NCBI RefSeq assembly: GCF_006345805.1
Contig: NC_043014.1
Location: 19,902,001-19,966,000 of the forward strand
Origin: Octopus sinensis
Taxonomy: Eukaryota
Direction: 5' to 3'
DNA length: 64,000 nucleotides
Position numbers and translations under genes: made by a program. Below the pieces are notes generated by a model, which saw only the letters and a list, made by a program, of their open reading frames with translations, was not told where the DNA came from and did not search any database. Positions 1,747-23,873 of the stretch are shown here, piece after piece (position 1 is the stretch's first letter; each line of letters begins with the position of its first letter).

Positions 1747-1774
1747 GTATATTGTATATATATATATATATACA

Positions 1775-1822
<48 letters not shown>

Positions 1823-2156: not shown

Positions 2157-2218
2157 TCAGATTTTGTATTCTCTGTATCGAACTTCTGCCGGGATAGTTT
2201 TATCTATGCCCCAGCCGT
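2157..2218 (-). CDS. Candidate terminal coding exon of host gene, (D)GWGIDKTIPAEVRYREYKI*
   Basis: Acceptor gtaatatctttag|AC; phase 1 matches the 3752-3948 exon; TGA at 2159-2157; minus-strand AATAAA at 1901-1906. Confidence 0.4.
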
Positions 2219-2938
2219 CTAAAGATATTACCAGTTGTGTTCTGATGTTCATTTCGTCTCTACCATTCAGTCTTTCTATCTGCTGCCTTTTCTTATCCTC
2301 ATTGAGAAAAAATATCTGCTGAGGTCAGACCTAGAGAGGGTCTAGTCTACCAGATCTTAAGCAGTACACAAGACAGTTACACCGTCTCTACTGAGAACGC
2401 AAAGCAAAGCAACGTACGCATATATAACAATGAATATTACGGAGATGTCAAGTTGGCTCCAAGAATGATTGATTTCGCTCATGAATCCACAAAACTGCTA
2501 GTGGAATAGACTGACGTATAAGTGACTTAATATAACTCACAGATACATGTACATTTGTGTAATAACCAATATGACATAGTACGAAGGAATATTAATCAGA
2601 ATGATCATTTGATTTACAGGTATAGTCAATATAGCTGACAGGTTTGCACAAAACTTAAGTACAAATTTCGCTCATAATGTTAATGGTAGTAAAAACAGGC
2701 TCAAGATACCGTGAATTGCGATCTAATAATATCTCTCTTCCTCTCTAACTCGCGGTCTCTCTTTTCTCTCTAACCCTTCCCCCTCTCTCATTCACTCTCA
2801 CTCTCTCTTTTTTCTCTCTCTGTCTCTTTCTTTATAGGTAATATAATACACCAATATATAATATGGATGTATGGATGTATATAATGCATATATATATATA
2901 TATATATATAATATATATATATATATAGAGAGAGAGAG

Positions 2939-2970
<32 letters not shown>

Positions 2971-3532
2971 TAGATAAATAGATACATACATATATAGATA
3001 TAATATATATATATATATAGGAATATATATATATATTATATATATAAACAACAGTACAAAAATTCTATATCATGATGACCTTGCAATGATATAATGTTAG
3101 ATATATGTTTTAATGATAGATGGAAAAAAAGAAGATATAACCATATGATCCAACGATGCCACAATATATACTAATGATTGCTTTATAACCATCAGACAAA
3201 AATAATGGGACATAAAATATATAACAATTATACATATAATGCAAAACAATTTGATACGATATAAGTTACATAAAGAAGCGCTAAAGTTGCTGCTCTAACA
3301 ATGTTATATAATGATGCAATATAATGGCAGCTTTAATATAGCTAATACCATACCAGAGCTGGAAGATATTAACAAATTATATATACATGCATATAAACAC
3401 ACATAACACATAACGATACATATGATATATATATATGTTCTTTTCTTCTTTTATCCTCTTATTTGTTTCAGTCATTTGACTGCTGATATGCTGGAGCACC
3501 ATATACATACATACATACATATATATACATAT

Positions 3533-3588
<56 letters not shown>

Positions 3589-3751
3589 GTGTCAGCAATA
3601 CACATACACATACACACATACACGCATACGAACGAAAGCATATTATGTGTGCATATGCATACAATAACAATTCTACTCCCTGATGTTGTATAGTAATTCC
3701 CCGTATTATCCTGGAAAAATAAGGAGAAGTCATAAGGGTACTGACACTTAC

Positions 3752-3948
3752 CTTGCGTAGTCTCCGAGTCTGATATAACAACAACATTTGGGATATGTGT
3801 TATGTCGGGTGAGACCCGGGGTGATGGCAGTATGTCAAAGCTATCATCTTCGCTATCCCCGCCACATAGGGGTAGCAATTTATTGTCCTGGGTGTCCTGG
3901 CTGTTCTCATCAGACAGGTACCCATTATGAGGCGACTGGTCGGGTAAG
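3752..3948 (-). CDS. Internal coding exon of uncharacterised host gene (LPDQSPHNGYLSDENSQDTQDNKLLPLCGGDSEDDSFDILPSPRVSPDITHIPNVVVISDSETTQ)
   Basis: Acceptor ttttcttttctttacag|C and donor AAG|GTAAGT are both consensus; 197 bp open frame (phase 2 to 1) in unique sequence; Ser/Asp-rich product. Confidence 0.75.
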
Positions 3949-4593
3949 CTGTAAAGAAAAGAAAATTATTATAAAATATGGGACACAACAATAACAACAT
4001 AAATAATACACCTCAATTTCACATGAAATTGTAACGCAAAAGATTCAACATTAATTTTTATCTGTTGGAAAGTAAACATTTTCACTCCGTCATTAACTTC
4101 TGAAATGTAATTTTCATAAAACTCCTCCGTCATGATGCGCTGACGTTTGTTTCCGTGATTGACCAGTCGCATATTTAGACTTCTTGAGGTATGTCTAATC
4201 AAAATCATTGTTTTATTACCGTTCACTATTCAAATGTTTACCCTGGATTTTTAATTCGAGTAAGAATCCTCAAGAAAAAGAAAAAGCGAGTGGTGGGGAG
4301 ACTGAGAGAGAGAGATCTAGATATTACCCTCACGCATGAGGGTGAATTTCTGTGTATATGTGTGTGTGAGAGAGAGTATGCGTGTGAGAGACTAATGTGT
4401 GTGTTTGTGTGTGTGTGTGTGTGTGTGTCTGTGTGCGCGTGTGTGTTCAGGCGCTGACATACATACACATAGGTAAGTGTGTTTGGATCTGTTCTCAATA
4501 CTATAGTAAAGGTTCATGTCTTATTATGCTGGAGTTTGTCCGTTCCTAAAATGTGTTTCGGCTATCAAGTGCACAGTGTCTGCAGGCAAGTTA

Positions 4594-4632
<39 letters not shown>

Positions 4633-4845
4633 CACACACATACACAAATACATACACAAACATATCTTATATGTTTAACTTTTTACTTGTTTCAGTCATT
4701 GGACTGTGGCCACGCTCGGGCACCACGTTGGGGTACATTTTCTTGCTTGAGTCGTCGAGCCACAAGTCACTTTAGATTGATCGATCTGGGCTTTCAACAA
4801 CACCAACACCCCAGATACACATTTACGCTAAACAAATCAGTGGCG

Positions 4846-4898
<53 letters not shown>

Positions 4899-5576
4899 TG
4901 ATGCTGAGATAGAGAGAGACCGATTCCATGAAATGTGAGTACGATCATTCTCTGGAGAGAACGAAAGTCTTTTAAAGCTAACATTCTCTGATGATCGTTG
5001 GTGCATATTTCGTGTTCAAACTGAGATGCAGACAATTAAACTCTTATCCCCTATTCACCACCTTTGCTCAAATTACACGATCAAACGATGAACGATTTCG
5101 TTGTATTTGAGCTCAACACGAATGGAAGTATTCTTCCATCTCATATTCACCTCCGCTTTCGCGATTTTACACCTGACAGATTATAAATTGATGGCTTAAC
5201 ATGGAAATGCATTTTCACATGTTTCTCTCAAAATGCAATAAGAACTTGCAGCTGTTAACATTGCAACAGCTGCGCTAAATATTTCGGATATCAACCGTAA
5301 AGCATGGCTGTTGTTGTTGTTGGGGATGGTGGCACTGGTTGTAGTTCTAATGATTGTCGTTTGCGTGGAGATGGTAGTGGTGCGTGGGCATGTGTCGGTT
5401 CGAAGAATTTAAAATTGCGCTTTAATACACCTAGCAGTGATTTGTTTTCTTTTATCTTCTTTTAAATCTCCACTCCTAACCAATCAAACGCAGTTTGCTA
5501 CCTCTGCTACTATAACTGCGTTTAGCAATAAGAAAAACAACAACAATAATAATAATAATCATAATAATAATTTACA

Positions 5577-5755
5577 ATGGTTTCAAATTTTGGCACAGTC
5601 TTGAGGGGAAGGGGCAAATCAATTACTTCAACCACATTACTGGAGCGACACTTTATTTTATCAAGATCTAAAGAATGAATGGCATATTTGAACTCAAAAA
5701 GACCCGGAAGAAATACCGTTAAGCATTTTGTCCGATGCTCTAATGATTCTGCTGA
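5577..5755 (-). mobile_element. SINE family B (Nin-domain-like), degenerate
   Basis: Reverse complement matches the family B head (CAGAATCATTAGAGCATCGGACAAAATGCTTAACGGTATTTC) and the tail TGTGCCAAAATTTGAAACCAT. Confidence 0.7.
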
Positions 5756-6016
5756 AGAAGAGGAGCAGGGGGAAGGGGAAGATGAAGAAGAAAACGGAAG
5801 AGAAGAAAAGGGAGGAGACTTTTCTTTATTGATAGACCAACATCGTGATTCCACATGCTATATCCAGCTCGATAGAGAACATACTCCTCCGCAGATCGAT
5901 AAGCCCTTTTGCAAATTCTCTTTTAAAGCATCCGAAAGCACTCAACTTTTTTGAAATACAGAGGAATGTCACCTTCCTCCTTATTCTTTCCGATATAGTT
6001 TTGTCGAATATTTCAC

Positions 6017-6047
6017 GTGTATACTTTCACTAGTTCCTTCCATGATG
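6017..6047 (-). CDS. Candidate micro-exon (SWKELVKVY)
   Basis: Acceptor catattttcag|CA, donor AC|GTGAAA; phase 1 to 2 bridges the 8925-9020 and 3752-3948 candidates; short, so it could be chance. Confidence 0.25.
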
Positions 6048-7009
6048 CTGAAAATATGTATATAGGCACGTATATAACTAATATAATTAAGAATTTCGCA
6101 ACTACGTGTTTTGGGGTTCATTTCCATTCCATAGGTCCTTAGGGTAAATGACTTTTAGCCTAGTTGCGCCACGACTACTGCATTCTGGGTGTAATATCGT
6201 GGATCAAAACTATGGAAAAAGACGGAAACATTCATATGTGAAAACACACAAGTACACATTTATATGAATGTGTGTGTTAATGTTTATGTCAATGCGTGTG
6301 CATGTGTGTGTTTGTGTACATCTATGTACATCTGTGCATTTGCATTAAAACTTCCTTAAGAATTGGTGATATGTTTATGTTCCGTCGACTTCAAGCATGC
6401 TAAGGCGATCGCCATGGATCGAAAAACGTGGAATAACAACACCATCGGCATCCAACGGCATCCACATCTAATAGTTGACAGAATAGCCTCACTCTACGGT
6501 CGCCAGTTTGGGATTTATTTACTAACCTTTTACGTCTGACGAATAGGAATTGATAAGATAATAATCAGTTTCTGTCAAAATCACTTAGAAAGGCAGTCAC
6601 GAGTTTTCGTACTTAGGATATTAGTCTAACGATCTTTAAGCCATGTTTCTCAGACCTGATCGGTGAGCAGTGTCCTTGGATGAGATATTCCTTTCAATGC
6701 TCAATCAACTAAAAATGGGTAGCAGCCAGGAAAGGCTTACTTTTGCGGTTTTGGTTACCCAAGCATTCGGAAACAAGGATATGCCTCGACCTCATTAGAC
6801 TGCAGGCTAGCGACATACATAGGTTGTTATTATCGATTAGACTGACTTGAAAGTGGAACCCCACATTGGCCACTAGCCAATTATAAATATAGTACATGAA
6901 ATGAATAAAACCATGAATGAATTCTAAACACAGGCATATTATTTTACATAAAGCCTCTTTTCTGCCATATATGCCCATCTCTCTCACTCACTCACTCACT
7001 CTCCTCCAC

Positions 7010-7035
7010 TCTCTCTCTCTCTCTCTCTCCCTCTC

Positions 7036-7114
<79 letters not shown>

Positions 7115-7464
7115 ATAGCATATTCTTATATGACTATGTGCACGCGGCTGTTTGCATGTGTACATTTACATAGATTTAATCGATATTAAATCTTAAACAT
7201 AAATACGTAAACATCACAACATGAAAATACGAAAACGACCAGCTCTCACAAAAGGATTTCACCACGCATTCCTTCATCTTCGTGAACTCCTCTGAGAGAT
7301 GTCAGTCGCTATTTTCGAAACAGTCGACTCATAGCTTATGTATAACAATTAGATATGATTTCTAAAATAAAGTAAGCTTGTATGCATCCCAAGAGACACA
7401 CATGTCCATACATATGCACACAAGTAACTAGCAATGTATCTAATTAGCTCTCGCTGTTTATATC

Positions 7465-7516
<52 letters not shown>

Positions 7517-7560
7517 ATATATATATATATATAGATAGATAGATAGATAGGTAGATAGAT

Positions 7561-7597
<37 letters not shown>

Positions 7598-7665
7598 GAT
7601 AGATAAATAGATGGATAAATATATATATATATATAGATAGATAGATAGATAGAAGATAGATATAT

Positions 7666-7732
<67 letters not shown>

Positions 7733-7930
7733 TATAGATAGATAGATAGCGATCTCTGCATATATGCATATAGAAGTACAGTTGAGTATAATATTTGTAG
7801 GTATGCATGTATGTATATATATAAATCTCCCTCTCTCTCTGTCTCGCTTTTTCTCTCCTTCTCTCTTTCTCTCTCTCTCTGCGTATATATATATATGCAT
7901 GTGTGTGTGTGCGTGTGTATAAGGATATAT
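7010..7930. repeat. Compound microsatellite block (CT)n/(TA)n/(GATA)n
   Basis: Long (TA)n at 7041-7110 and (GATA)n at ~7530-7750, directly visible. Confidence 0.95.
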
Positions 7931-8383
7931 AGTCATAATATATATATACAGTTATGTTATATACAGTAAATATTTATAAAATATACTGCGTCAATCCCAT
8001 TCTCAAAAACACGAGTAATATTGATAATTCTGCGGACAGCTATGTAAAAGCGTCATCTGTGTAGGTTACAGAAGATGACAATCACTCTTTTGGGTAAATA
8101 AACAGAAAATAACTACGATTCTTTTTCATGCGTTTTGAGAACGATTGTTCCCTCGTCTTAAAGAAATCGCCTTCAGTTTTGGCTGCCTAGAGAATTATTA
8201 ATCTAAATTGCTGACTCTTGTTGTTTGCCAGGCTATTGTAATTTGCTTTACGTATACCATTTTTTTTATTGGGAAACGCTGTCAGTTATTTTCCTCTCTT
8301 CGAAGTGAATGACAACAGTATTTTTGTTTAAGTGTAAGCATTGTGTAACCTTTAGATTGATCTAAAACTATTTTCATTATATA

Positions 8384-8760
8384 GGCGCAGGAGTGGCTGT
8401 GTGGTAAGTAGCTTGCTTACCAACCACACGGTTATGGTTTCAGCTCCAATGCGTGGCACCTTCTGCAAGTGTCGTCTACTATAGCCTCGGGATGACCAAA
8501 ACCTTGTGAGTGTTTTTGGTAGATGGAAACTGAAAGAAGCCTGTCGTATATATTTATATATATATATGTATGTATGTGTATGTGTGTGTGTGTGTGTGTG
8601 CGTGCGTGCGTTTGTGTATGTTTGTGCGCCTGTGTTTGTCCCCTCAACATTGCTTGACAACCGATGCTGGTATGATTACGTTCCCGTCACTTAGCGGTTC
8701 AGCAAAAAAGACCGATAGAATAAGTACTAGGCTTACAAAGAATAAGTCCTGGGGGTTGAT
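8384..8760 (+). mobile_element. SINE family A, lacking the last part of the tail
   Basis: GGCGCAGGAGTGGCTGTGTGGTAAG head through AATAAGTCCTGGGG. Confidence 0.9.
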
Positions 8761-8924
8761 GGAGAGAGTGAGATAATGTGCAGCACATACAAAAGCTGAA
8801 CATTTATACGTCGTCTTCGACGGGAGAGTCCATTTGTATATATATATATATATATATATATAAGGGCAATATCCAGGGATCGAAGTATAAGAAGTTTGGA
8901 AGCTTTATGTTATATCACCTTAAC

Positions 8925-9020
8925 TTATTCGAACATGATCTGTGTGGTCTGTAGGGAATTGTTGATTTGGTTTGTTTCGAACATCTATTCTGTTGATAAA
9001 CTCAAAGCATCCGGGAAAGG
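8925..9020 (-). CDS. Candidate coding exon, (A)FPGCFEFINRIDVRNKPNQQFPTDHTDHVRI
   Basis: Acceptor tttttgtgatag|CC, 97-bp intron to the 9118-9207 exon, phase 1; the donor A|GTTAAG is weak and the alternative is a TAA stop at 8922-8920. Confidence 0.45.
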
Positions 9021-9117
9021 CTATCACAAAAATATTGAGAAAAACACAAAACATGTATGATAATAAAATTATATCGTAACCAGAAAGCACCTTGTCATTC
9101 GTGAGTAAATAAAATAC

Positions 9118-9207
9118 CGTAGAAAAAGCCTTGCTTTTCAGAAAACCAACATAGGTCACGTCTTTCCATTATTTCCATGATTCGTTTTTCTTCTCTCACA
9201 TCTGAAT
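9118..9207 (-). CDS. Candidate coding exon, (D)SDVREEKRIMEIMERRDLCWFSEKQGFFY
   Basis: Acceptor attctttttcaag|AT, donor ACG|GTATTT; 90 bp, phase 1-1, open frame. Confidence 0.55.
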
Positions 9208-10049
9208 CTTGAAAAAGAATATTTGACAGCAATGTTTATATTTTTACGTTTATCTTAGAGCAAATACGAATGTATTTGCAGTACAATGCTCTTTGATTTC
9301 CTTCTGTCACCAAGTAAACGTAACCTGCTTTACCAATGTTATATACGAGAGAATAATGCGATCTCCTGCATAAATTTTTCTGAGAGAGCTTATATGTACA
9401 ATATACCAACGAATGAGTATATAGCTAGAAAAGAGAATATATATAACATTAATATTTCAGGGGGAAATATGGATATCGCAGTTATATATAGGACCATGGT
9501 TAAAATAAGAAACCTCGTAATAGAGATGAAATGTTATAAACTGTGATTGGAACAAAGATAAAATATTATCTAGAGGATGAAAATTAATTCATTGGTTCTA
9601 CAGATTCACTGACATGCAATCATAGTTTATCACCGCTACATATTACGTGATCGGCTACACATCATTTCCATTCTCACTATGTATTCCCCATTACAAAAAA
9701 TCAAACCAACTCTTTTACAGAATTTATTAAAATGAAACAATAAAACAGTAATTTCCTTTCTTTCTTTTTCTACATTTAATAATGTAGGTCAATCACCTCG
9801 TAAGACATTAAACTACTTCCAATTCATTTATTCTCTTGTTTATTACATTGATTTTCACATGACTTTTTCCCCGCAGGGAATTACGGAAAACAAAACAAAC
9901 AATATTTTTTTGTAGTCTAGACAGCAATTGGCGATTTCATACGTATTAATGAATTCCAATACTGCTGTGTTCTTACGGCACGCATTACATACCGTAATCG
10001 ATTTAAATAACAACCACCCGCAAATTAAACTGCCGGTATATATGTATAA

Positions 10050-10250
10050 GGTGGTTAGCTGGCAAAATCGTTAGTACGCAGGTCAAATGGCTTAGTCATT
10101 TTTACGTTCTGAGTTCAAATTCCGCCGATGCTAACTTAGCTTTCCATCCATTTTGAGGTCGATAAAATAGGTACCAGTAGAACACTAGGGCCGAGGTAAT
10201 CGGCTAAATCCCTCCCCCAAATTTCAGGTTTTGCGCTTGTAATAGAAAGG
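10050..10250 (+). mobile_element. SINE family B (Nin-domain-like)
   Basis: GGTGGTTAGCTGGCAAAATCGTTAG head, GTTCAAATTCCGCC B-box-like motif, TTTCCATCCATTTTGAGGTCGATAAAATAGGTACCAG core. Confidence 0.85.
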
Positions 10251-10265
10251 ACATACATCTATATA

Positions 10266-10655
10266 TTCTCTTTTACTCTTTTACTTGTTTCAGTTATGTG
10301 ACTGTGGCCATGCTGGACTACTGCCTTTATTCGAACAAATCGACCCCAGGAATTAAGCCTAATACTTATTCTATCGGTCTCTTTTGTCGAACTGCTAAGT
10401 TACGGGGACGTAAACACGCCAGCATAGGTTGTCAAGCGATGTTGGGGGTACACACAAACATATACACACATACATATATACATACAGATATACGACGGGC
10501 TTCTTTCAGTTTCCGTTTACCAAATCCACTTACAAAGCTTTGGTCGGCCCGAGGCTATAGTAGAAGACACTTGCCCAAGGTGCCACGCAGTGGGACTGAA
10601 TCCGGAACCATGTGGTTCGTAAGCAAGCTACTTACCACACAGACTCTCCTACGCC
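10266..10655 (-). mobile_element. SINE family A, full length
   Basis: Close match to the 1-398 copy along its whole length. Confidence 0.9.
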
Positions 10656-10702
10656 TAGATATATGTATTATGTGATTAAGAACAATCGAGGAAGTGAATT
10701 AC

Positions 10703-10816
10703 CATCAACGTAGACATCCTGCGAAGTAACTTGCCATGAATAACACTCCTCTTTTGCATAATATATATAAAAATACAGTCGGAGCATTGACTTTCCATTG
10801 TGATATTGTATATGCG
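10703..10816 (-). CDS. Candidate coding exon (HIQYHNGKSMLRLYFYIYYAKEECYSWQVTSQDVYVD)
   Basis: Acceptor actcacttacag|CG, donor ATG|GTAATT; 114 bp, phase 1-1, open; joins in frame to 9207. Confidence 0.55.
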
Positions 10817-10984
10817 CTGTAAGTGAGTACTTGTTTGATTAACTAAATCTGTATTTCCTATATTCATGTGTGTCCCCATCGCCTTTGTGTGTGTATATAT
10901 ATATATATATATGTTTATGTGTATGTATGTACGTACGTACGTATGTATGTATGTATGTGTATATGTATGTATGTATATATGTTG

Positions 10985-11183
10985 ATTCGCTAGCTTCTGC
11001 ACGCATTTTTTTCTCTCCTTGTTTATTTCCGTGTTTCTTTTCTGTGTATCTTTCTGTTGAAGAGCGTAGGCTCGAAACGTAAAAGACTTGTTTTATTTAT
11101 ATTCCTGAGCGCCATACTAATACAATTGTTTGTTTGTATTCCACCTGCCTTCGTCTTTTGTTTATTTTCATAAAGCTTCCCGT

Positions 11184-11187
<4 letters not shown>
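10985..11187 (+). mobile_element. Penelope-type terminal repeat fragment with hammerhead-like motif
   Basis: CTTT-CTGTTGA-A-GAGC(gtag)GCTC-GAAAC-GTA-AAAG at 11050-11085; related to 38860-39107. Confidence 0.55.
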
Positions 11188-11217
<30 letters not shown>

Positions 11218-11307
11218 TGTATGTATGTATGTATGTATGTATGTATGTATGTGATCAGGCCAAGAAGGAATGATCATGCTTGGACGAGCATCGATCACGT
11301 GGGAGGA

Positions 11308-11358
<51 letters not shown>

Positions 11359-11735
11359 TTGAGAGAGAGTAGAGGGATTGAAGAATTAGGGAAGAAACTA
11401 GAGACAGACTGGGAGAGACACAGAGGGAGCACAGAGGGGAGGTACAAGTAAGATAGTGGGAGAAAGTAGAGAGATTAAAGAAAGAGAATGCCAAGAAATG
11501 TGAGAGAGGGGGAGCAAGAAAAAGAAAAGAGCGAAGATAGAACTCGTAAATAAATAAATATATATATATTATATATATTATGCTATATGTATATATATAT
11601 ATATATAATATATATATGCATATATATACATATACATACATATATATATCATATGTATACATACATATATATATATATAGATATATATAGTATATATATA
11701 TATTATATATAGCATAATATATATATATATATATC

Positions 11736-11852
11736 CTCATGATCACCGTGACCGACCAGGCTATCAGATGTTGCTACACATCGCTGGTCACATGCGCTTC
11801 GCATTGTTTTAACTTCAAATGACGCCACCTCACTGCCAAGCGAGCAGGCAGG

Positions 11853-11855
<3 letters not shown>
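11736..11855 (-). mobile_element. Interspersed repeat fragment (probable SINE 3' portion)
   Basis: GC-richer segment CCTCATGATCACCGTGACCGACCAGGCTATCAGATG...GCGAGCAGGC between (TA)n tracts; family assignment inferred. Confidence 0.45.
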
Positions 11856-11917
<62 letters not shown>

Positions 11918-12350
11918 TATATATATACGAGTACAGGACGTTACAAAACGTAAACAATATGGAATACGGAAACAAACTTGGGTGCGCGCAAACAATGAGA
12001 GAAACAAATGGAAAACAAGACAAGTAACATAACGAAAGACCATTCATCAGTTGTGGGCTGTCCATTTACTCCTCATTTCGAGCATATATATGTATACACC
12101 TATGTACATATGTGTGTTGTTGTGTGTATATAAATATGTATATATGTATATATATGTATGTATATGAATATATATATATTTATGTACATATACGTATATA
12201 TATATTTATATATGTATGTATATGCATATATATATGTATATGTGTATACGTATATATATATACGTTTAAATATTTGTTGGGCAAGATTTTTTTTGGCTAA
12301 ACTGGCAATATGACCATTCCGAAATATAACAACAATATATATATCTATAT

Positions 12351-12423
<73 letters not shown>

Positions 12424-13099
12424 ATTCCCATACGTATATTCTAACATACACATTTTCTTTTCTTTTGTCTTTTTTGTTTTTTTTTTTATTGGTAAAGGGT
12501 TTCATTGTCTCCAAGTTACTCCAGTATTATCTGTCATTCTACTTCCGTTCTCAAGAGGAAACTATGTGTGTAAACATACTAACTATTGATTTTTAAAGAA
12601 CATTAGAAACACCGACACCATTGCCAACAACCAGGACAAATATCAACAATCAAACCCTCACCGCCACCACAACCACCAGCATCAACAACAATATCAAATA
12701 TAACCCATTTAAAAGAAAAAGTAACTTGTAATTCATGTTGTAAGAGACAGACTGACCGAGCGGTTATTGGAATGATAAGTTAGTTCCTTTTCAGGCGTAG
12801 TATAGCAGGCCTCTGATCCCAGGAGTTCGATTTGTGAACATTCCATCGCTACCAGTCTTTCGTCGTTTGCCCAGAGCTAACGATTCAGTGCATATCTATT
12901 ATAGTGTAGGATTTTAGTTAGATTTGGCAGCTCTTTCTAGTTAATAAAATATCTGGCTTAATCTAAGGAGGAAGAGCAACACCTATGACTTTTGGGTGTC
13001 TTAGAGATTGGTGATACAAAGGCATCCCTAAAATGGAGACCTGTCCTGAATAATATACACAACATTAACTTCTTTTTTTTTTTTGGACCAGCACCAGGG

Positions 13100-13550
13100 A
13101 CAGAAGAAAAAATCGGTTCAGTTATGGCCTCGTGGTTTCGGGTTCAGTTCCATTGCATAGGCATGTTGAACAAGTATCTCCTGTTTTGAGCACGGAACGA
13201 CCAGTGATTTGTGAGTGTATGTCACAGACAGAAACTATGAGGAGTCATTCGAACATGTGTGTGCACGCGTACATGTGTGCGTGTGTGTATGTGTGTGTGT
13301 GTGTGTATTTGTGTGCATGTATGTGTGAGTGAGTGTGTGTGTGCCTGTATGTATGTGTGTGTGAATGTTTGTACGTGTGTGTGTGTGTGTGCCTTTGTTT
13401 TAGTGTTTGTTTCCTGAAATTTGACGAATGATATCGAATTGATTAGTTTCCAATATCTTAACGGTTCCGGTAATGCGTTTCATTGTTTCGCCTAACCCTA
13501 CAAGGCAGTCCTGCAGCAACACTGACGCCTAATAACTGAAACAAGTAAAC
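13100..13550 (+). mobile_element. SINE family A, highly degenerate
   Basis: GGTTTCGGGTTCAGTTCCATTGCATAGGCATGTTGAACAAG head remnant, internal (TG)n, tail ACTGAAACAAGTAAA. Confidence 0.55.
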
Positions 13551-13569
13551 CTGTAAAAGAGTAATTTAC

Positions 13570-13695
13570 AGAAATATTCTACTTCCAGATCCCCGATCTT
13601 TGTCATTTTTAAATGATGAGCGCTCTTTCCAGTGTTTCCTTCACATTCAGAGGAGGACAGGTGAGCATTTTTTTTTGGCTCGCCGGATCTGACCC
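13570..13695 (-). CDS. Candidate coding exon (VRSGEPKKNAHLSSSECEGNTGKSAHHLKMTKIGDLEVEYF)
   Basis: Acceptor ttttagcagttgcag|GG (an alternative phase-1 acceptor lies at 13704), donor TCT|GTAAAT; phase 1-1; joins 10816 to give ...EVEYFSHIQYHNG... Confidence 0.45.
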
Positions 13696-13789
13696 CTGCA
13701 ACTGCTAAAATAGATAAGCCCTCGACCCAAGGGTATTTCAGATGTTAAAGTACTCGAAACGCAACTTGTGTATAGTATGTATCTTTTGC

Positions 13790-14052
13790 TTTTAACATTT
13801 TGACTGCGGCCATTCAGGGTCACCGTCATGAAGCACATTTAGCCAAATGTACCGACCGCAGTATTCATTTTTTAAAATTTGGTACTTATTCTGTCGGTCA
13901 CATTTGCAGACGTAAAAACACGGCTGTGAAGCGGTGGAGGAGAACGAACATAGACGCAAAGACACAAATACATACACACACACACGTATATATATGTGTG
14001 TGTGTTTGTGTGTGTGCGTGTGTGTGTGTATGTGTGTGTGTGTATGTATGTA

Positions 14053-14101
<49 letters not shown>

Positions 14102-14189
14102 ATATATATATATGTGTGTGTGCATATATATATATGTGTATGTGTATATATATATATATTATATATATATATATATCGTGTGTGTAAGT

Positions 14190-14221
<32 letters not shown>

Positions 14222-14367
14222 CGTACATATATGCGACTGGCTTCCTTCAGTTTCGGCGTACGAAATCCACTCACAAGGCTTTGGTCGCCCCGAGTCTATA
14301 GTAGAATATACTGCCCCAACCATGTGGTTGGATGCAAGCTTCTTACTACACAGCCACTCTTGCATCT
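13790..14367 (-). mobile_element. SINE family A with greatly expanded internal microsatellite
   Basis: Tail remnant at ~13790-13960, head at ~14230-14367, about 270 bp of (TG)/(TA) between. Confidence 0.75.
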
Positions 14368-14510
14368 ACGTTTTCTGACGTTCCCTTCCGTGTTAATTGA
14401 AAGGGTTTTGTGAAATGAAAATATAGTATCCAGTTCTGTGTACAGCCCAAGGCAAGATTATTCGGCAGATTGGCAAGTGTGCATGCAACAGGTCTCTTTA
14501 TCTTCGTTAC

Positions 14511-14601
14511 GCATTTGCGCATGTTCAACCAATTTGCAAGATGCGGTCAAGCTTGGTGAGCGCGACGTAATAAGTGTTGCCATGCAGAAGTCAATGACAA
14601 A
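14511..14601 (-). CDS. Weak candidate exon (FVIDFCMATLITSRSPSLTASCKLVEHAQM)
   Basis: Acceptor gactgtcatag|TTT, donor TGC|GTAACG; phase 0 to 1 fits between the 17758-17866 and 13570-13695 candidates. Confidence 0.25.
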
Positions 14602-14642
14602 CTATGACAGTCTTACCATCTCAAACTGGTGATGATTGGACA

Positions 14643-14646
<4 letters not shown>

Positions 14647-14681
<35 letters not shown>

Positions 14682-14736
14682 GTGTGTGTGTGTTATATGA
14701 GATATTTATGTTATATATGCGTATATGTATATATAC

Positions 14737-14792
<56 letters not shown>

Positions 14793-14847
14793 CACAGATA
14801 TAGTTTTACATATATATATATGTACATCTATGTATATATACATATAT

Positions 14848-14889
<42 letters not shown>

Positions 14890-16253
14890 TACATACACAC
14901 ACACAAACACATGCGTGCGCACACACCCACACCCATATTTGGTTATTAAATAAGTATTTATTAAATTTTATTAGATTTTATTTCGATGGGCTTCAGGACC
15001 TTGCATCTCGTCAGTTTGACTCACACGACTAATATTGAGCAGAGGTAGTGTAGACAGCGCTTCCTGAAGATTCAGTAATTGAATAACTGGAATTGAATCT
15101 GTACTATGGAGATGCGGAAGCAAATATCTTAACCAATGGTTCACTTCACTCAGTGCTTATACCATTACTAAACTGTCTAAAGTCTGGCTATAATAATAAG
15201 ACTATGATTCACCGATGAGTTATTATATGACCGAAACATGCATGGTGTTGTCATCCTACAGCGAAACGTTAGACTCACTCACTATTTCAGGCAATAATAA
15301 ATTTAATTAATTTAATTAATTTAAAATATGTATTTATCTCCTCTACATTATTATCATAAAGCAAATTTCTTCATCACTATGAATGATATTGAATGAATTA
15401 TAATTTATTCGCAACCTACAGTTACTATCCTCTATTTTTTACTTGCTTCTGTCATTCGACTACGGCCAAGCTGCAGTACCACCTTGAAGAATTTTGCTTA
15501 AAAATGGAACTTATTCTCTTGGCCTACTATTTCCAAAGCACTAGATTAGGAGGACTTAAAAAAACCCAACACCGGTTGTCGAGTTGAGGTGGTGAAAACA
15601 CACACGTACATACACACACACACACACACACATACAGAGGCATGGATATGTATATACCATGGGCTTATTTTAGTTATCATCTAACATACCCACTGGCAAG
15701 GCTTTGGTCGACCCGGGGTTATAGTAGAAAATACTCACAAACTGTCACACGGTGAGATTGAACCTGGAATCAGAAGCTTCTTCCCACACGGCCAATTTTC
15801 ATTTACAATTTTCATACAATTTTCATTTACGTAAGTGACCCTAAATAAATGTTTCCACTTTTACAATAACGTCGTTTTAGATCAAATAATTATATATAAA
15901 GTGCATCGTAAATATGTGCATAGCAACACTCCAAGCATTTGCTGTGTTTGCGATCATATAACATCAGAGAAAACCGCATAACACGTTTCCATTCTCTCTT
16001 CAACTGTTTATGCATGCATGTATCTATGTATGAATGTATGTATGTATGTATGTATATGTATGAAATTTATGGATGTACATATGTATTTCTGTATATGTGT
16101 ATGCAAATATGTAAACATATGTTAGCATTTGTATCTATACACACGCTCACACACACGTGTGTGTGTTGTGTGTGTGTGTGGTGTGTGTGTGTGCGTGTGT
16201 GTGTGTGTGTTATATGAGATATTTATGTTATATATGCGTATATGTATATATAC

Positions 16254-16308
<55 letters not shown>

Positions 16309-16344
16309 CACAGATATAGTTTTACATATATATATATGTACATC

Positions 16345-16376
<32 letters not shown>

Positions 16377-17676
16377 ATATATATATATATAATATATATA
16401 TATATATGCATACATACACACACACAAACACATGCGTGCGCACACACCCACACCCATATTTGGTTATTAAATAAGTATTTATTAAATTTTATTAGATTTT
16501 ATTTCGATGGGCTTCAGGACCTTGCATCTCGTCAGTTTGACTCACACGACTAATATTGAGCAGAAGGTAGTGTAGACAGCGCTTCCTGAAGATTCAGTAA
16601 TTGAATAACTGGAATTGAATCTGTACTATGGAGATGCGGAAGCAAATATCTTAACCAATGGTTCACTTCACTCAGTGCTTATACCATTACTAAACTGTCT
16701 AAAGTCTGGCTATAATAATAAGACTATGATTCACCGATGAGTTATTATATGACCGAAACATGCATGGTGTTGTCATCCTACAGCGAAACGTTAGACTCAC
16801 TCACTATTTCAGGCAATAATAAATTTAATTAATTTAATTAATTTAAAATATGTATTTATCTCCTCTACATTATTATCATAAAGCAAATTTCTTCATCACT
16901 ATGAATGATATTTGAATGAATTATAATTTATTCGCAACCTACAGTTACTATCCTCTATTTTTTACTTGCTTCTGTCATTCGACTACGGCCAAGCTGCAGT
17001 ACCACCTTGAAGAATTTTGCTTAAAAATGGAACTTATTCTCTTGGCCTACTATTTCCAAAGCACTAGATTAGGAGGACTTAAAAAAACCCAACACCGGTT
17101 GTCGAGTTGAGGTGGTGAAAACACACACGTACATACACACACACACACACACACATACAGAGGCATGGATATGTATATACCATGGGCTTATTTTAGTTAT
17201 CATCTAACATACCCACTGGCAAGGCTTTGGTCGACCCGGGGTTATAGTAGAAAATACTCACAAACTGTCACACGGTGAGATTGAACCTGGAATCAGAAGC
17301 TTCTTCCCACACGGCCAATTTTCATTTACAATTTTCATACAATTTTCATTTACGTAAGTGACCCTAAATAAATGTTTCCACTTTTACAATAACGTCGTTT
17401 TAGATCAAATAATTATATATAAAGTGCATCGTAAATATGTGCATAGCAACACTCCAAGCATTTGCTGTGTTTGCGATCATATAACATCAGAGAAAACCGC
17501 ATAACACGTTTCCATTCTCTCTTCAACTGTTTATGCATGCATGTATCTATGTATGAATGTATGTATGTATGTATGTATATGTATGAAATTTATGGATGTA
17601 CATATGTATTTCTGTATATGTGTATGCAAATATGTAAACATATGTTAGCATTTGTATCTATACACACGCTCACACA

Positions 17677-17708
<32 letters not shown>
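14647..17708. repeat. Near-identical ~1.52-kb tandem duplication bounded by (TG)n tracts
   Basis: Identical ORF-track translations at 15393/16916 and the same N-terminal sequence at 15939/17462 (offset 1523); (TG)n at ~14647, ~16157 and ~17679; each unit holds a degenerate family A SINE (~15425-15793, ~16948-17316). Confidence 0.95.
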
Positions 17709-17712
<4 letters not shown>

Positions 17713-17757
17713 CGTGCGTCAGTGTGCACGCCACACTGTCAATGTGAGTAAGGATAC

Positions 17758-17866
17758 TTTAAAATCCACGAAGAAAACTAGCACGGATAAGGAGACGACT
17801 GTTCCGGTTTTGCTTGCAAGTGAAGTGTCCTTTGTCAATCTGGAATCTTCTGATATAACTCTATAC
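17758..17866 (-). CDS. Weak candidate exon (YRVISEDSRLTKDTSLASKTGTVVSLSVLVFFVDFK)
   Basis: Phase 2 to 0; joins 18995 to give ...AWNYRYRVISED...; the acceptor aacaacag|G lacks a pyrimidine tract; donor AAA|GTATCC. Confidence 0.25.
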
Positions 17867-17887
17867 CTGTTGTTGTTGTTGATACTA

Positions 17888-17941
<54 letters not shown>

Positions 17942-18543
17942 AAATTTAAGTGATTTGTCTCTATTTCTATTTGATCAGACATAGAACAGAAATTGGAAAA
18001 ATTTCTTTTAATGTCCTTTAAAATTTACACACAGTTTATGCGCATATATACACGCATGCACATTTGCAAATCAAGGTACAACGGAATGCTGAGACACGCG
18101 CATTTATACTTATGTACGCATACAAACACACAAACACACATATGCACAGACGCTCTCGCACGCACATGCATAGGTGAATGTATGGTTACATGTACGTCAC
18201 CGGATGAATATAGTCGTAAGGGGATATGTATGTAGTATATGCATGTAGAAGCACATCACTCAACCTAAGAATCTCTTTTAGTCTTACTCAGTACATCTCT
18301 TTCTCTCTCTCTCTCCCCTCTCCCCCTCTCTCTCTCCCTTTCTATTTTTCTCTGTTTCTATTTTTCCTATATATACATACATACATGAAAATGAAGGCGA
18401 TCCACATAAGCTTCGAAGTCACTTAACTGTTCCAAATTATAGTGATTTTATGTATGAATGTACATAAATTTTTATATTTATATTTTTATATTTGTATTTC
18501 GTAAAGAAAGATAAATGCACGCACAATCACATGGATGCATAGG

Positions 18544-18602
<59 letters not shown>

Positions 18603-18629
18603 CAGAGAGAGGGAGAGAGAGAGAGATAG

Positions 18630-18668
<39 letters not shown>

Positions 18669-18695
18669 GAAAAAGAGAGAGAGAGAGAGAGAGAG

Positions 18696-18727
<32 letters not shown>

Positions 18728-18994
18728 CATTGCAAAAGCAATTTGCCGCTTTGTATTCAATGTCTGATCAAGTATAAATCGAAATAAATACCATATATTT
18801 AAATGTTCCTTTGCTCGGGTAATGTATTTGCGTTACAAAAAGGTTTCTTACAAAATAGCTCTTTAAGCCAAATAGATAAAAGTCATCCATTTTATGAAGC
18901 ATGACGGCATCTTTATCATACTATTTCTTTCATTGCCTCACTACTAAATCTATCAACTATAACAGTTTAATATCCGTGTCAATAAATAATTTAC

Positions 18995-19078
18995 CGGTAG
19001 TTCCACGCGATAGATCTGTCTCTTAGCGCGGTCGATCGATGTAGCTCGACATAGTACCCGAATTTACCTCGGAAGATA
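18995..19078 (-). CDS. Candidate coding exon (IFRGKFGYYVELHRSTALRDRSIAWNY)
   Basis: Acceptor caatttcctgttcgtcatgcag|T, donor CCG|GTAAAT; 84 bp, phase 2-2; only one frame is open. Confidence 0.55.
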
Positions 19079-19329
19079 CTGCATGACGAACAGGAAATTG
19101 AACTCGTAGAGGACAGGAAATAGGCTAGAAGTCGATCAGGTTGTCGGGGCAAGTAGGAAAGGGCGTCATGTACAAGTATATAGTTCTAGATGTGGGTGAG
19201 TAGACGCGCTCATATAGTTGTGCGTACGTGTATATATGGATGCGAGTGTACGCATCTGTACATGGCACACAGTCGCACGTCTGAACACACACACGCTTAG
19301 ATGAACACGCACGCGCGCACATTGCGAGG

Positions 19330-20260
19330 GGTTCCTGTCGTTGATTAAGAAACACTTCCCCAGAGGCCATAAGAATTACATACTTTTCAACCCCCATATT
19401 ATCAAAGAGAGCTACTCCTGCTTAGACACCATCGCATCTAACATCGCACACATCAACAGATGTAAAAATGCACCCATACTAACCTTGATCCCAACCTGCA
19501 ACTCATGAAACCCCACCATGTGTCCTCTGGAAAAATCTTGTCTCTCAAGGGCCGTATTATACAAAGCCACACATACACCATCCGATGGTATTACAAGGCA
19601 CTTTACGGATATGACAGCCAATGACTTCAAGGGAAGATACTCCCAGGATATGCACTCGTTTAGATCCAGTGATAGAGAGAACTCTACCTCCCTGTCTCGT
19701 TTTCTCTGGAGACTCCATGATCTCCGAGATGAAATACCCAGCATCAAGTGGACTATCGTCGACAGAGCGCAACCATATTCACCCGGTACCCACAAATGCC
19801 AGCTCTGCATCCGCGAAAAACTGCATATCTTCCAACAACCCACAAAAACCCTTTATTTAAATAAAACCCTTGATTCAATAACACTGTGTATAAACTCTAT
19901 ACTTGGAGTGACCAACTTTAAATACTATTGCATTTTACTCATAAGAGATTGGAATCATATAAGTATATCATTCTGCCTAAATAATGGATCTACAAATACA
20001 ATATCCCTGCATATTTCACATTTACTTTCATTCCTCCTCCTCACTCTCTATCTCGTATGTTATCTAAATTAACTATTGCTTAACCATCATTTCACACCGT
20101 CTCCGATGAACAGATATAATAAATATCCTAGAAACAACCGTAAGACCTTCTATTTATAAATTTTCTAAATTCAACACAGACTTGGTTTTTTTTATATCAT
20201 AATAAAACAAATTATATACACACGCTGATATATGACATAAATTGGACCCCTTAATCGCAT
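19330..20260 (+). mobile_element. Penelope-like element 3' fragment: linker, GIY-YIG endonuclease and tail
   Basis: FLSLIKKHFPRGHKNYILFNPHIIKESYSC then CPLEKSCLSRAVLYKA...FKGRYSQDMHSFR...NSTSLSRFLW...KWTIVDRAQPYSPGTHKCQLCIREKLHI (ORF 19518+), typical of Penelope GIY-YIG domains; hammerhead-like remnant at 20099-20146. Confidence 0.85.
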
Positions 20261-22333
20261 AATCACCGAACCTGGAACTTAACTATTGTCTATCCATAGC
20301 ACTTATTCAGCATTACCTGACACCTTTGGTCTCACTGATACCAGTACCTCTCATAACCTATATATATATATAAATATAAATGTGTGTGCTTGTATGCCTG
20401 CGTGTTAGTTTGTGTGTACGTGTGTGCGTGCATGTGTGTTTAAGAACCGGTGTTGACGTGTTTGCGTTCCCGTAATATCAGCTGTTTAACAATAGACACC
20501 GATGGAATAAATAAGAGGCTTTAAAATTATGTTTCTCATATCTCATTCTCCACATAACTACACAAAGATAAGAGTCAATTTTTGGAACTGTGTGTCCCAC
20601 ACCGAAGTTTGTTTCCACGTTTTAAAAATGCCCAGGTACTCTGTTTGTTGATTACATTCAATTTGCCGGTTGCACTCCTTGTGCGCATGCGCAGCATCTT
20701 TGATTACTATAGAAACAGAAGTCTTCGCAATCAGCTTTGGAACACTTGGTGATTCTTTGCTTAATGTGCTTATAGAACTTCACGAAAATGTGTAAAATAC
20801 TCGCATATGATTGGCTAAAACACCCAAATTTTGCAAATTTTAAATTTTAAAGGAATTCAAAATTACAAAATTACAAATTTATACTTTGTAATTTTGAATT
20901 CATAGGGAGAAGGTCTCTCACAACCTTTCTCACAAAGAAACGTCGGTGACTCAGAGAAGATAATCGATCCGAATCCTTGAATAAATAACATTTTATTCAT
21001 TTACCCCGGAACGGTAAAGGGCAAAATTGACATCGGCAAGATCTGAATGTGGAGAATGCAGAGTGCCGGAAAACACACAGGACATCCTATCCAGCGATCT
21101 AATGACTGATAATTCACCTATGACAATACTTCCTTTTGAATTTGCGCAGAAATAACCTACGAAATGGAGCAGTTAAAAGGTTTTTATCTTGCAAATGCTC
21201 CAATTAAGGGCAGTCCTAATTCAGCAATAACATTAAGCAATAACGAATTCGCCTTTTTAGGGCATAGTACAATTAAGGCTTTTATTAATTACATCCCTAT
21301 TTGTTTACATATATTGCGATGATTTGTGAGGTGGCTGCTACTTGTATAAGACCAAGTGTGACTATGCTAGACCCTCATTTGCTTCAGTACGTAACATGTT
21401 GTTATTAATAATGTGTTATATAGCCATGGTCATCTGAGAAGGAGTAGTCCAGTGATTTCAAGCAGTCTATTCATTGTCTGCACTTGCATCAGAATATCTA
21501 ATGTCTCAGTTATATTGTGTTTCCCTACAAGAAACTCAGTTATATTGTGTTTCCCTCAGTTATATTGTGTTTCCCTACAAGAGGTGACCTGCACTAAGTT
21601 CTACATCATACAATGATTTAACACGTGAGATGTAGTATCGAAGTGTTTCTTCATCGGTATTGGTTGTTTTCTAGGTAATGTACTGGCGGAAGTATTTGTA
21701 TCAGCATGTACCGATGTAAGTTCAAAACCCACCGAGATTAACTACCTATCATCCTTCAAGGTTCGCTAAATAAAGTAGCATTAGAGAAACCGCTACAGTA
21801 TTTGATTGGAAGCATTACAATGTACGTTTCGGTTTTCGCGTTCTAACTCGAAATCCCTCCGACGTGGTCAGAATGAATAATAGACTGACTGATGTCAATA
21901 AAATTAAACATCAGTCAAGTACTGGGGCCAATAACAGCCCTACCCTGTTCCACAACCCAACAAATATACGCAGTATCTCTATGAGAAAGAATCTATATTA
22001 CAGATCATTCTATGATATTTGGTTTAATATATATGAAAAGATGGTTGAACATTCAATAAGGCCTGTGTATTATATTAAACTGAATTTAATTAAAAATATT
22101 TTGCGCAGCGGCTATGCTTCATTGTTAGAAATGTTGCATCTCCCAGTGTAAATGAATAGCTGATGATAGATAAGAAGGTTGTTATGTTTGCTTTTTCTAA
22201 GCATTTATTCCAGTATAAGTCTGCTGAAAGGAGTAATACCGATGGGCATACAATAGAATGACACTAAACAAGATTATCATATGAGAAAATTAGGTGAGTA
22301 GAGCATACGTATGTATCTCTCCCCTTCTCTGTG

Positions 22334-22366
<33 letters not shown>

Positions 22367-22393
22367 ATGTGTGTGGTGTGTGTGTGTGTGTGT

Positions 22394-22431
<38 letters not shown>

Positions 22432-22927
22432 GAATATCTGAATATCGGGAGACACATATAGATATATGCCCAACAGGGACAGATGAGCACAAAATCACAC
22501 AGACAACCACACACAAGCACATACAGAAATACATACACACACACAAAGGTACAAAAATTGCTTTGTGGATAAGTGATTCGTTTCGCAAATTTCGTTTTTT
22601 ATTTTTTTGGAGTTCGATATTAAAACCTGGTGCCTCAGAGAAGTTTGTTTCATTCAATGCTGATGAATACTTTATTTTAGAGGAATACGTAATACGAAAA
22701 TATTAGGAAGTAACATACACAAACTCGCACGCATAATTATGTATGTATGTATGTATGTATGTATGTATGTATGTATGTATGTATGTATGTATGTAGTATG
22801 TATGTATGTATGTATGTACGTATGTATGTATGTATGTATGTATCCATTCTTTTGGATCTCCTAACACACATATAACAGCAAACAAAAGGCGTATAAGCCA
22901 TTTTGGATAGTAAGATTTATATCATAC

Positions 22928-23059
22928 AACCCTCCTCACGCACATATTTTCTTGAACAATGCCAATACGCTTCTCTCTCTTGATTTGTGAGGCTCGTCAA
23001 TGTCCGAAAGTCTGGAGCGTTACTTCTATAAATTCTGAAGAATTCTGTTTCGCTCATAT
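22928..23059 (-). CDS. Candidate coding exon (MSETEFFRIYRSNAPDFRTLTSLTNQEREAYWHCSRKYVREEG)
   Basis: Acceptor cttaccattgcttgaattag|AT; donor GTT|GTATGA (end 22928) or TGC|GTGAGG (end 22940); both give phase 1-1; open frame in unique sequence. Confidence 0.5.
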
Positions 23060-23815: not shown

Positions 23816-23855
<40 letters not shown>

Positions 23856-23873
23856 AACGCACACATACATGTA

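What the first reader, a model, noticed from the sequence alone, without database searches (positions are those of the whole stretch)
2157..23059. Hidden minus-strand multi-exon gene of unrecognised family, largely missed by the ORF track
Seen: short unique segments on the minus strand each have AG/GT sites and an open frame, and their phases chain: 19078-18995 (2-2), 17866-17758 (2-0), 14601-14511 (0-1), 13695-13570 (1-1), 10816-10703 (1-1), 9207-9118 (1-1), 9020-8925 (1-1), 6047-6017 (1-2), 3948-3752 (2-1), 2218-2157 (1-stop), with AATAAA at 1906-1901. The joins read smoothly (IAWNYRYRVISED; DLEVEYFSHIQYHNGKSMLRLYFYIYYAKEECYSWQV; VYVDDSDVREEKRIMEI; QGFFYAFPGCF). I recognise no domain. Inference: a lineage-restricted protein with an aromatic-rich globular region and an acidic Ser/Pro-rich C-terminal tail. 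The weak exons may be wrong, and the exon(s) linking 23059-22928 to 19078 were not resolved.
Basis: partly seen in the sequence, partly recalled or inferred. Interest (0 to 1): 0.7.

Follow-up and report, generated by a model that had tools for sequence, protein, structure and literature searches.

The report
One annotated octopus exon, rest chance
Of the eleven proposed exons, only 3948-3752 has outside support, as an already annotated coding exon of a huge, octopus-only, uncharacterised gene; the others are no better than chance in repeat-rich intron DNA.

Summary
The coordinates are accurate. All eleven minus-strand segments have AG/GT flanks and the stated open frames. Ten chain into a 332-codon frame ending at TGA 2157, and AATAAA is at 1906-1901.

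The chain is not more than chance. The region holds about 2,500 such segments per strand. Ten-exon phase-compatible chains of about 1,970 nt exist on both strands of every 21-kb stretch, and chains of 1,800-1,930 nt exist in shuffled sequence.

Only 3948-3752 has outside support. It is 100% identical to residues 394-458 of NCBI "uncharacterized protein LOC128250243 [Octopus bimaculoides]" (501 aa, gene range about 450 kb). It has the best splice sites in the window: a 16/19 acceptor and a perfect AAG|GTAAGT donor. The rest of that protein is encoded outside the window. In O. vulgaris the upstream exon ends at a conserved AG|GTAAGA donor in the matching phase.

No protein matches the other ten segments. 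The proposed "aromatic-rich globular region" and terminal exon are therefore unsupported.

The real gene is octopus-restricted. It has one relative among 1.84 billion representatives, no Pfam domain, and is predicted disordered. The exon encodes an acidic Ser/Pro-rich stretch with a SUMO-interaction-like motif, VVVISDSE.

Verdict: ordinary, and the real part is already annotated.

The parts
3752..3948 (-). Real coding exon (197 nt, phase 2-in/1-out). It encodes residues 394-458, plus the last base of codon 393 and the first base of codon 459, of O. bimaculoides LOC128250243 (P0001).
   Evidence: It is 100% identical to P0001 over LPDQSPHNG...SDSETTQ, and identity stops exactly at both splice sites. 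GC is 0.50 against 0.354 for the region. It is the only strict-threshold exon candidate in the window.
3949..3968 (-). Acceptor: polypyrimidine tract TAATTTTCTTTTCTTTAC followed by AG.
   Evidence: Acceptor heuristic 16/19, at the 99-100th percentile of 1,068 AG sites in the region. The sequence was read directly.
3746..3751 (-). Donor GTAAGT, preceded by exonic AAG. This is a full match to the U2-type consensus.
   Evidence: Donor heuristic 9/9, the top of 1,263 GT sites. The sequence was read.
3762..3785 (-). Codons for VVVISDSE: a SUMO-interaction-motif-like hydrophobic core followed by a Ser/Asp/Glu flank with a CK2-type SDSE site.
   Evidence: Motif scan. It resembles the experimentally used SIM peptides of PML (ERVVVISSSEDSD) and IE2 (CIVISDSEEEQ) quoted in PMC5646861. 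The function is inferred, not tested.
3949..64000 (-). Inferred intron of LOC128250243 upstream of the exon.
   Evidence: Residues 1-392 of P0001 are not encoded anywhere in the window. The gene range is about 450 kb. Transposon remnants were found and repeats.
1..3751 (-). Inferred intron downstream of the exon.
   Evidence: Residues 459-501 of P0001 are not encoded in the window, so the annotated last exon lies beyond the window start.

Best explanation
The window lies inside a very large gene (about 450 kb) on the minus strand, Octopus bimaculoides LOC128250243. That gene encodes a 501-residue, octopus-restricted, largely disordered protein with no known domain.

Within 2157-23059 the only real coding piece is the exon 3948-3752. 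A large upstream exon (residues 1-392, more than 60 kb away and outside the window) ends in ...GAA AG|GT. It is spliced to the strong acceptor at 3948, so that AG + C makes Ser393. The exon's perfect donor at 3752 is spliced to a last exon beyond the window start.

The other ten segments are ordinary unique stretches of intron between microsatellites. They happen to be open for 10-42 codons and to be flanked by AG and GT. Such segments are so common here that a phase-compatible chain can always be built.

The real exon encodes an acidic, Ser/Pro-rich, disordered stretch. Its VVVISDSE element most likely acts as a phospho-regulated SUMO-interaction motif. This last step is inference.
For: Shown:
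- The exon is 100% identical to P0001 residues 394-458, with identity ending at both splice sites.
- The rest of P0001 is absent from the window, and the gene range is 449,620 bp on a 47.9-Mb scaffold of GCA_001194135.2.
- The O. vulgaris ortholog P0002 (88% identity over residues 1-392) ends 'QER*'. Its DNA reads caa gaa ag|g taa gag, which is a read-through of a conserved strong donor in exactly the phase needed to join the C at 3948.
- The exon has the best acceptor and donor in the region and is the sole strict-threshold candidate in 64 kb.
- Chance tests show the chain is unexceptional, and candidates are as frequent on the plus strand as on the minus strand.
- The joined peptide found only P0001, and only through this exon. 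The 23059-22928 frame found nothing.
- There are no Pfam hits.
- An exhaustive HMMER search of P0001 found only P0002.
- AlphaFold2 gives pLDDT below 50 for residues 1-476.

Inferred:
- The SIM function, from the motif and CK2-type sites and the resemblance to the PML and IE2 SIM peptides (PMC5646861).
Against: - I could not see transcript evidence. The join of this exon to the distant upstream exon rests on NCBI's gene model plus the conserved donor and matching phase.
- The O. vulgaris annotation does not include an ortholog of this exon, and no other species' protein matches it, so the exon has no cross-species support here.
Intrinsic coding potential therefore does not exclude those segments.
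- The protein database appears to hold no octopus transcriptome-derived ORFs, because even the 392-residue exon of P0001 has no such hits. Absence of hits therefore speaks only to annotated proteomes.
- The AlphaFold2 run used a two-sequence alignment, so low confidence is weak evidence for disorder.
Confidence: 0.82

Rival explanations
1. An unannotated gene, or an alternative isoform, uses most of the listed exons upstream of 3948 and encodes an aromatic-rich folded domain followed by the acidic tail.
For: All sites and phases exist as stated. Three segments score high on a crude codon-usage measure. Segment 19078-18995 has decent sites, with acceptor 14 and donor 7.
Against: - The chain is well within chance.
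- Most sites are mediocre, with donor scores of 4-6 of 9 for six segments and acceptors at the 37-46th percentile for two.
- Candidates are equally common on the other strand.
- No annotated protein of any cephalopod, or of anything else, matches any of these segments.
- 'LRLYFYIYYA' in 10816-10703 is translated from a TA-rich microsatellite remnant.
- The annotated model splices straight from the distant exon into 3948.
Confidence: 0.04
2. The exon 3948-3752 is real, and 2218-2157 with the AATAAA at 1906 is a genuine alternative last exon and polyadenylation site, giving ...SETTQDGWGIDKTIPAEVRYREYKI*. The annotated last exon, whose product ends LLYLFYCLIFIYI, would then be the doubtful or alternative one.
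For: The phase fits, since G|AC makes Asp. The acceptor is at the 75-84th percentile. AATAAA lies about 250 nt downstream of the stop. The annotated C-terminus looks like translated repeat-like sequence.
Against: A 62-nt segment is open in some frame 70% of the time. AATAAA occurs once per 1.1 kb, so one within about 250 nt is expected roughly one time in five. No protein matches the peptide. AlphaFold2 models the annotated C-terminus as a confident hydrophobic helix, which is compatible with a real tail anchor.
Confidence: 0.07
3. The exon 3948-3752 is not really protein-coding. It could be a spliced non-coding or untranslated exon that the automatic gene model attached to the upstream open reading frame, which in O. 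vulgaris is annotated as a complete single-exon gene.
For: The O. vulgaris model stops one codon after the junction. There is no cross-species protein match for the exon. The gene range of 450 kb for 501 codons is unusual.
Against: A 65-codon open frame in the correct phase has a chance probability of about 0.04 for a given frame in this region. GC and GC3 are raised, at 0.50 and 0.51 against 0.354. The splice sites are consensus on both sides. The upstream donor is conserved in O. vulgaris, which implies that splicing to something downstream is ancestral.
Confidence: 0.1

Closest known systems
Octopus bimaculoides LOC128250243 (NCBI 'uncharacterized protein', 501 aa; P0001) and its O. vulgaris ortholog ('Hypothetical predicted protein', 394 aa; P0002)
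   Same: The window exon 3948-3752 is identical to residues 394-458 of P0001. Strand, phase and splice sites all agree.
   Different: Nothing differs for that exon.
Phospho-regulated SUMO-interaction motifs, such as the PML SIM (ERVVVISSSEDSD) and the cytomegalovirus IE2 SIM (CIVISDSEEEQ)
   Same: It has a four-residue aliphatic core (VVVI) followed directly by Ser/Asp/Glu (SDSE, a CK2-type site), within a predicted disordered acidic stretch (peptides quoted in PMC5646861).
   Different: This is only a short linear motif. There is no homology to PML or IE2, no binding data, and such cores also occur by chance.
Spurious ab initio exon chains in AT-rich, repeat-rich metazoan introns
   Same: Short open segments (31-132 nt) with minimal AG/GT flanks chain in phase. 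They are as frequent on the opposite strand and in shuffled sequence.
   Different: One member of the chain happens to be a real exon, and that gave the model its plausible acidic tail.

Membership tests
LOC128250243 coding sequence (O. bimaculoides) | Translated sequence identical to the annotated protein, bounded by splice sites | tested here: met
   For 3948-3752 there are 65/65 identical residues, and identity ends at AG| and |GT.
   tblastn of P0001 against the window finds only the one exon. BLASTP of P0001 against the joined peptide finds nothing else.
LOC128250243 coding sequence (O. bimaculoides) | Upstream exon ends at a donor in the phase that fits the 3948 acceptor | tested here: met
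   O. vulgaris ortholog DNA reads ...caa gaa ag|gtaagag. AG + C(3948) = AGC = Ser393 of P0001. The O. bimaculoides upstream exon itself could not be fetched.
   Ten-exon chains of about 1,970 nt exist on both strands, and of 1,800-1,930 nt in shuffles, against 1,000 nt claimed.
   No Pfam family at E up to 10. The only protein hit is through the annotated exon. The 23059-22928 frame has no hit.
   Candidates in 2157-23059 at three thresholds: 17, 134 and 739 on the minus strand against 18, 173 and 807 on the plus strand.
   No RNA-seq data and no other octopod genome region orthologous to the window could be reached. The O. vulgaris locus L001 covers only 10 kb either side of exon 1 and holds no match.
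SUMO-interaction motif (SIM) | Aliphatic core [VIL][VIL]x[VIL] or [VIL]x[VIL][VIL] | tested here: met
   VVVI at exon residues 55-58, P0001 residues 448-451.
SUMO-interaction motif (SIM) | Adjacent acidic or phosphorylatable Ser/Thr residues | tested here: met
   SDSETT follows the core, and SDSE fits S-x-x-E.
SUMO-interaction motif (SIM) | Lies in an accessible, disordered segment | tested here: inconclusive
   pLDDT is 32-37 over residues 390-460, but from a two-sequence alignment.
SUMO-interaction motif (SIM) | Binds SUMO | not testable with these tools
   This needs a binding experiment.

The most novel reading that the evidence does not exclude
LOC128250243 is a real, octopus-specific orphan gene. 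Its product is a long disordered protein that carries a phospho-regulated SUMO-binding tail, encoded by this exon, and perhaps a C-terminal membrane anchor.
Probability: 0.06. Interest if true: 0.3.

Novelty: already known. Interest (0 to 1): 0.08.

Why it matters
It matters little. The one real element is already in the NCBI annotation of O. bimaculoides as part of an uncharacterised gene.

The useful outcome is negative. In octopus introns (35% G+C, 18% tandem repeats), reading AG/open-frame/GT chains by eye gives convincing-looking but chance gene models. Splice-site strength and outside matches are what separate the real exon from the rest.

There is one modest point of biological interest. 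The gene is restricted to Octopus, spans about 450 kb for 501 codons, and its tail carries a SUMO-interaction-like motif.

Tried and rejected
- **Pfam.** Scans of the joined peptide, the 23059-22928 peptide, P0001 and six other open frames in or near the finding found nothing relevant.
- **Exhaustive search with the joined peptide.** P0001 was searched instead and found only P0002.
- **Third word-indexed search.** The 23059-22928 frame plus the 187-codon frame at 19509-20069 gave no hits. I had suspected from memory that the latter was a GIY-YIG / Penelope-like remnant. That was not confirmed and is dropped.
- **Codon-usage score.** Trained on the O. vulgaris exon, it did not discriminate.
- **Self-comparison.** This tested whether the segments are transposon copies. 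They are unique in the window, so that explanation is rejected.
- **Rfam and tRNA scans of the window.** Both found nothing.
- **O. vulgaris ortholog of the exon.** A search of the 10 kb downstream of O. vulgaris exon 1 found none, as expected if the intron is long.
- **O. bimaculoides gene locus.** It could not be fetched because the range is too long.
Full report
**1. The observation**

I re-read all eleven minus-strand segments.
- Each has AG immediately upstream and GT immediately downstream. The exception is 2218-2157, which ends in TGA as claimed.
- Each is open in the stated frame.
- Joining the ten segments from 19078 to 2157 gives exactly 1,000 nt. Frame 1 of that sequence is open for 332 codons and ends in TGA.
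- That translation contains the four quoted junction peptides: IAWNYRYRVISED, DLEVEYFSHIQYHNGKSMLRLYFYIYYAKEECYSWQV, VYVDDSDVREEKRIMEI and QGFFYAFPGCF.
- AATAAA is at 1906-1901 on the minus strand.
- The segments are unique in the window apart from a TA-rich stretch inside 10816-10703.
- None lies in a tandem-repeat array, although 18% of the region does.

The description is therefore accurate.

**2. Is it more than chance?**

It is not, with one exception.
- The region is 35% G+C. Random non-repetitive stretches of the segments' lengths are open in at least one frame with probability 0.29-0.93. For the 197-nt segment the figure is 0.12.
- The minus strand of 2101-23100 holds 2,524 AG..open..GT segments of 84-250 nt. 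The plus strand holds 3,166, and other parts of the window hold about 2,900.
- I ran a dynamic programme for the longest chain under these limits: ten phase-compatible exons, 30-200 nt each, non-repetitive, introns of at least 80 nt. It reaches 1,962-1,989 nt on both strands of all three 21-kb stretches. It reaches 1,804-1,931 nt in eight dinucleotide-preserving shuffles.
- AATAAA occurs 58 times on this strand, about once per 1.1 kb.

Simple consensus scores for the splice sites separate one segment from the rest.
- 3948-3752 has TAATTTTCTTTTCTTTACAG| as acceptor. This scores 16/19, at the 99-100th percentile of all AG sites in the region.
- Its donor is AAG|GTAAGT, which scores 9/9, the maximum.
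- The other segments have donors of 4-7/9, and two have acceptors at the 37-46th percentile.
- With thresholds of acceptor at least 15 and donor at least 8, the whole 64 kb holds one candidate on the minus strand (3948-3752) and one microsatellite-containing candidate on the plus strand. These thresholds were chosen after seeing the exon's scores.
- At three looser thresholds, candidates inside 2157-23059 number 17, 134 and 739 on the minus strand and 18, 173 and 807 on the plus strand. There is no strand bias of the kind a gene would give.

**3. What is really there**

- A search of 5.8 billion proteins with the joined 332-residue peptide found a single protein, P0001. This is NCBI 'uncharacterized protein LOC128250243 [Octopus bimaculoides]', 501 aa.
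- The match covers only the segment 3948-3752. Residues 394-458 of P0001 are identical to it, and identity stops at both splice sites.
- tblastn of P0001 against the window finds nothing for residues 1-392 or 459-501.
- The gene's recorded range is 449,620 bp on a 47.9-Mb scaffold of GCA_001194135.2.
- The window therefore lies inside this gene and contains one of its coding exons.

**4. Independent support for the annotated join**

- P0001 has one relative, P0002 of O. vulgaris. It is 394 aa, 88% identical over residues 1-392, and ends ...WLERQER.
- Its DNA (locus L001) is a single exon that reads ...caa gaa ag|g taa gag.
- The O. vulgaris model has therefore read through a strong donor (AAG|GTAAGA) for one codon and hit a stop.
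- The two exonic bases left at that donor (AG), plus the first base of the window exon (C), give AGC. This is Ser393 of P0001.
- So the donor and the phase are conserved between the two species at exactly the annotated junction.
- I could not see transcript data, so the long-range join itself rests on NCBI's model.

**5. The other ten segments**

- No protein matches them. The joined peptide hit nothing else, and the 23059-22928 frame hit nothing.
- No Pfam family matches at E up to 10.
- This speaks only to annotated proteomes. Even the 392-residue exon of P0001 has no hits from transcriptome or read assemblies, so octopus runs seem not to be represented in that part of the database.
- A codon-usage log-odds score trained on the 394 codons of the O. 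vulgaris exon did not discriminate. The true exon falls at the 90th percentile of chance candidates, and three reader segments fall at the 98-100th percentile. I count this as inconclusive.
- 'LRLYFYIYYA' in 10816-10703 comes from TA-repeat-like DNA.
I put the chance that 2218-2157 is a real alternative last exon at about 7%.

**6. What the real exon encodes**

- The 65 residues are LPDQSPHNGYLSDENSQDTQDNKLLPLCGGDSEDDSFDILPSPRVSPDITHIPNVVVISDSETTQ.
- They include 13 Asp/Glu, 2 Lys/Arg and 20 Ser/Thr/Pro. There are two CK2-type sites, SEDD and SDSE.
- There is an aliphatic core VVVI followed by SDSE. This is the pattern of a phospho-regulated SUMO-interaction motif.
- The SIM peptides used experimentally for PML (ERVVVISSSEDSD) and IE2 (CIVISDSEEEQ) are very similar (PMC5646861).
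- AlphaFold2 on the two-sequence alignment gives pLDDT below 50 for residues 1-476. The only confident element is a hydrophobic helix at 479-500, which is encoded outside the window.
- The most likely role of the exon is therefore a disordered acidic tail segment that binds SUMO or SUMOylated partners. This is inference from a short motif, and I give it about 25% confidence.

**7. Comparison with what is known, and novelty**

- P0001 has no Pfam domain.
- An exhaustive HMMER scan of 1.84 billion representatives found only P0002. The gene is octopus-restricted as far as these data show.
- However, the gene is already annotated. The proposed globular region is not part of it, and the hidden-gene claim fails.
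- The real part is already known, and the rest is not a real feature.

**8. Surroundings**

The rest of the window looks like repeat-laden intron.
- It contains a 1.57-kb tandem duplication, SINE-like repeats that are also present at the O. vulgaris locus, and a 709-bp inverted repeat.
- It contains remnants of a Pif1-type helicase, a reverse-transcriptase tail and a weak DDE transposase.
- It has no Rfam or tRNA hits.

Noticed in passing
window 14640-16203 and 16155-17726: A near-perfect tandem duplication of about 1.57 kb, 98.8% identical over 1,574 aligned bases.
   Followed up: partly
window 2-404, 10274-10662, 27022-27391; also 25210-25442, 37954-38259, 56885-57092: A dispersed SINE-like repeat of about 390 bp. 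Copies are 85% identical within the window. Copies also match O. vulgaris locus L001 9625-9954 at 68-72%, so the family is shared by octopods. ARAGORN finds no tRNA and Rfam finds nothing.
   Followed up: partly
window 60856-61404 (-): A 183-codon open frame with a Pif1 2B helicase domain (E 2.8e-14). It is probably a Helitron-type helicase remnant.
   Followed up: partly
window 47612-49865 (+): Open frames of 170 and 393 codons. The second has a zf-RVT match (E 1.1e-5, just below Pfam's cut-off). The region has a strong A-over-T skew (+0.46 at 48-50 kb). It is probably the tail of a non-LTR retrotransposon.
   Followed up: partly
window 43497-43793 (+): A 99-codon frame with a weak DDE_3 transposase match (E 0.004, below Pfam's cut-off). 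It may be a Tc1/mariner-like remnant.
   Followed up: no
window 50411-51117 and 52785-52077: A 709-bp inverted repeat, 92.4% identical, with arms about 960 bp apart.
   Followed up: no
window 35902-36001: A run of 100 N, which is an assembly gap.
   Followed up: no
window 19509-20069 (+): A 187-codon open frame of normal composition inside the finding's span. It has no Pfam hit and no homolog. My recollection that it resembles a GIY-YIG element was not confirmed.
   Followed up: yes
P0001 residues 459-501 (encoded outside the window): The annotated last exon gives ...SILRFTLLYLFYCLIFIYI. AlphaFold2 models this as the protein's only confident element, a hydrophobic helix (pLDDT 79-94). It could be a tail anchor, or a doubtful terminal exon translated from repeat-like DNA.
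   Followed up: no
L001 11176-11190 (O. vulgaris OX597833.1): The O. vulgaris gene model for the ortholog appears truncated. It reads through a consensus donor (AAG|GTAAGA) and stops after one codon, so downstream exon(s) are probably missing from that annotation.
   Followed up: partly
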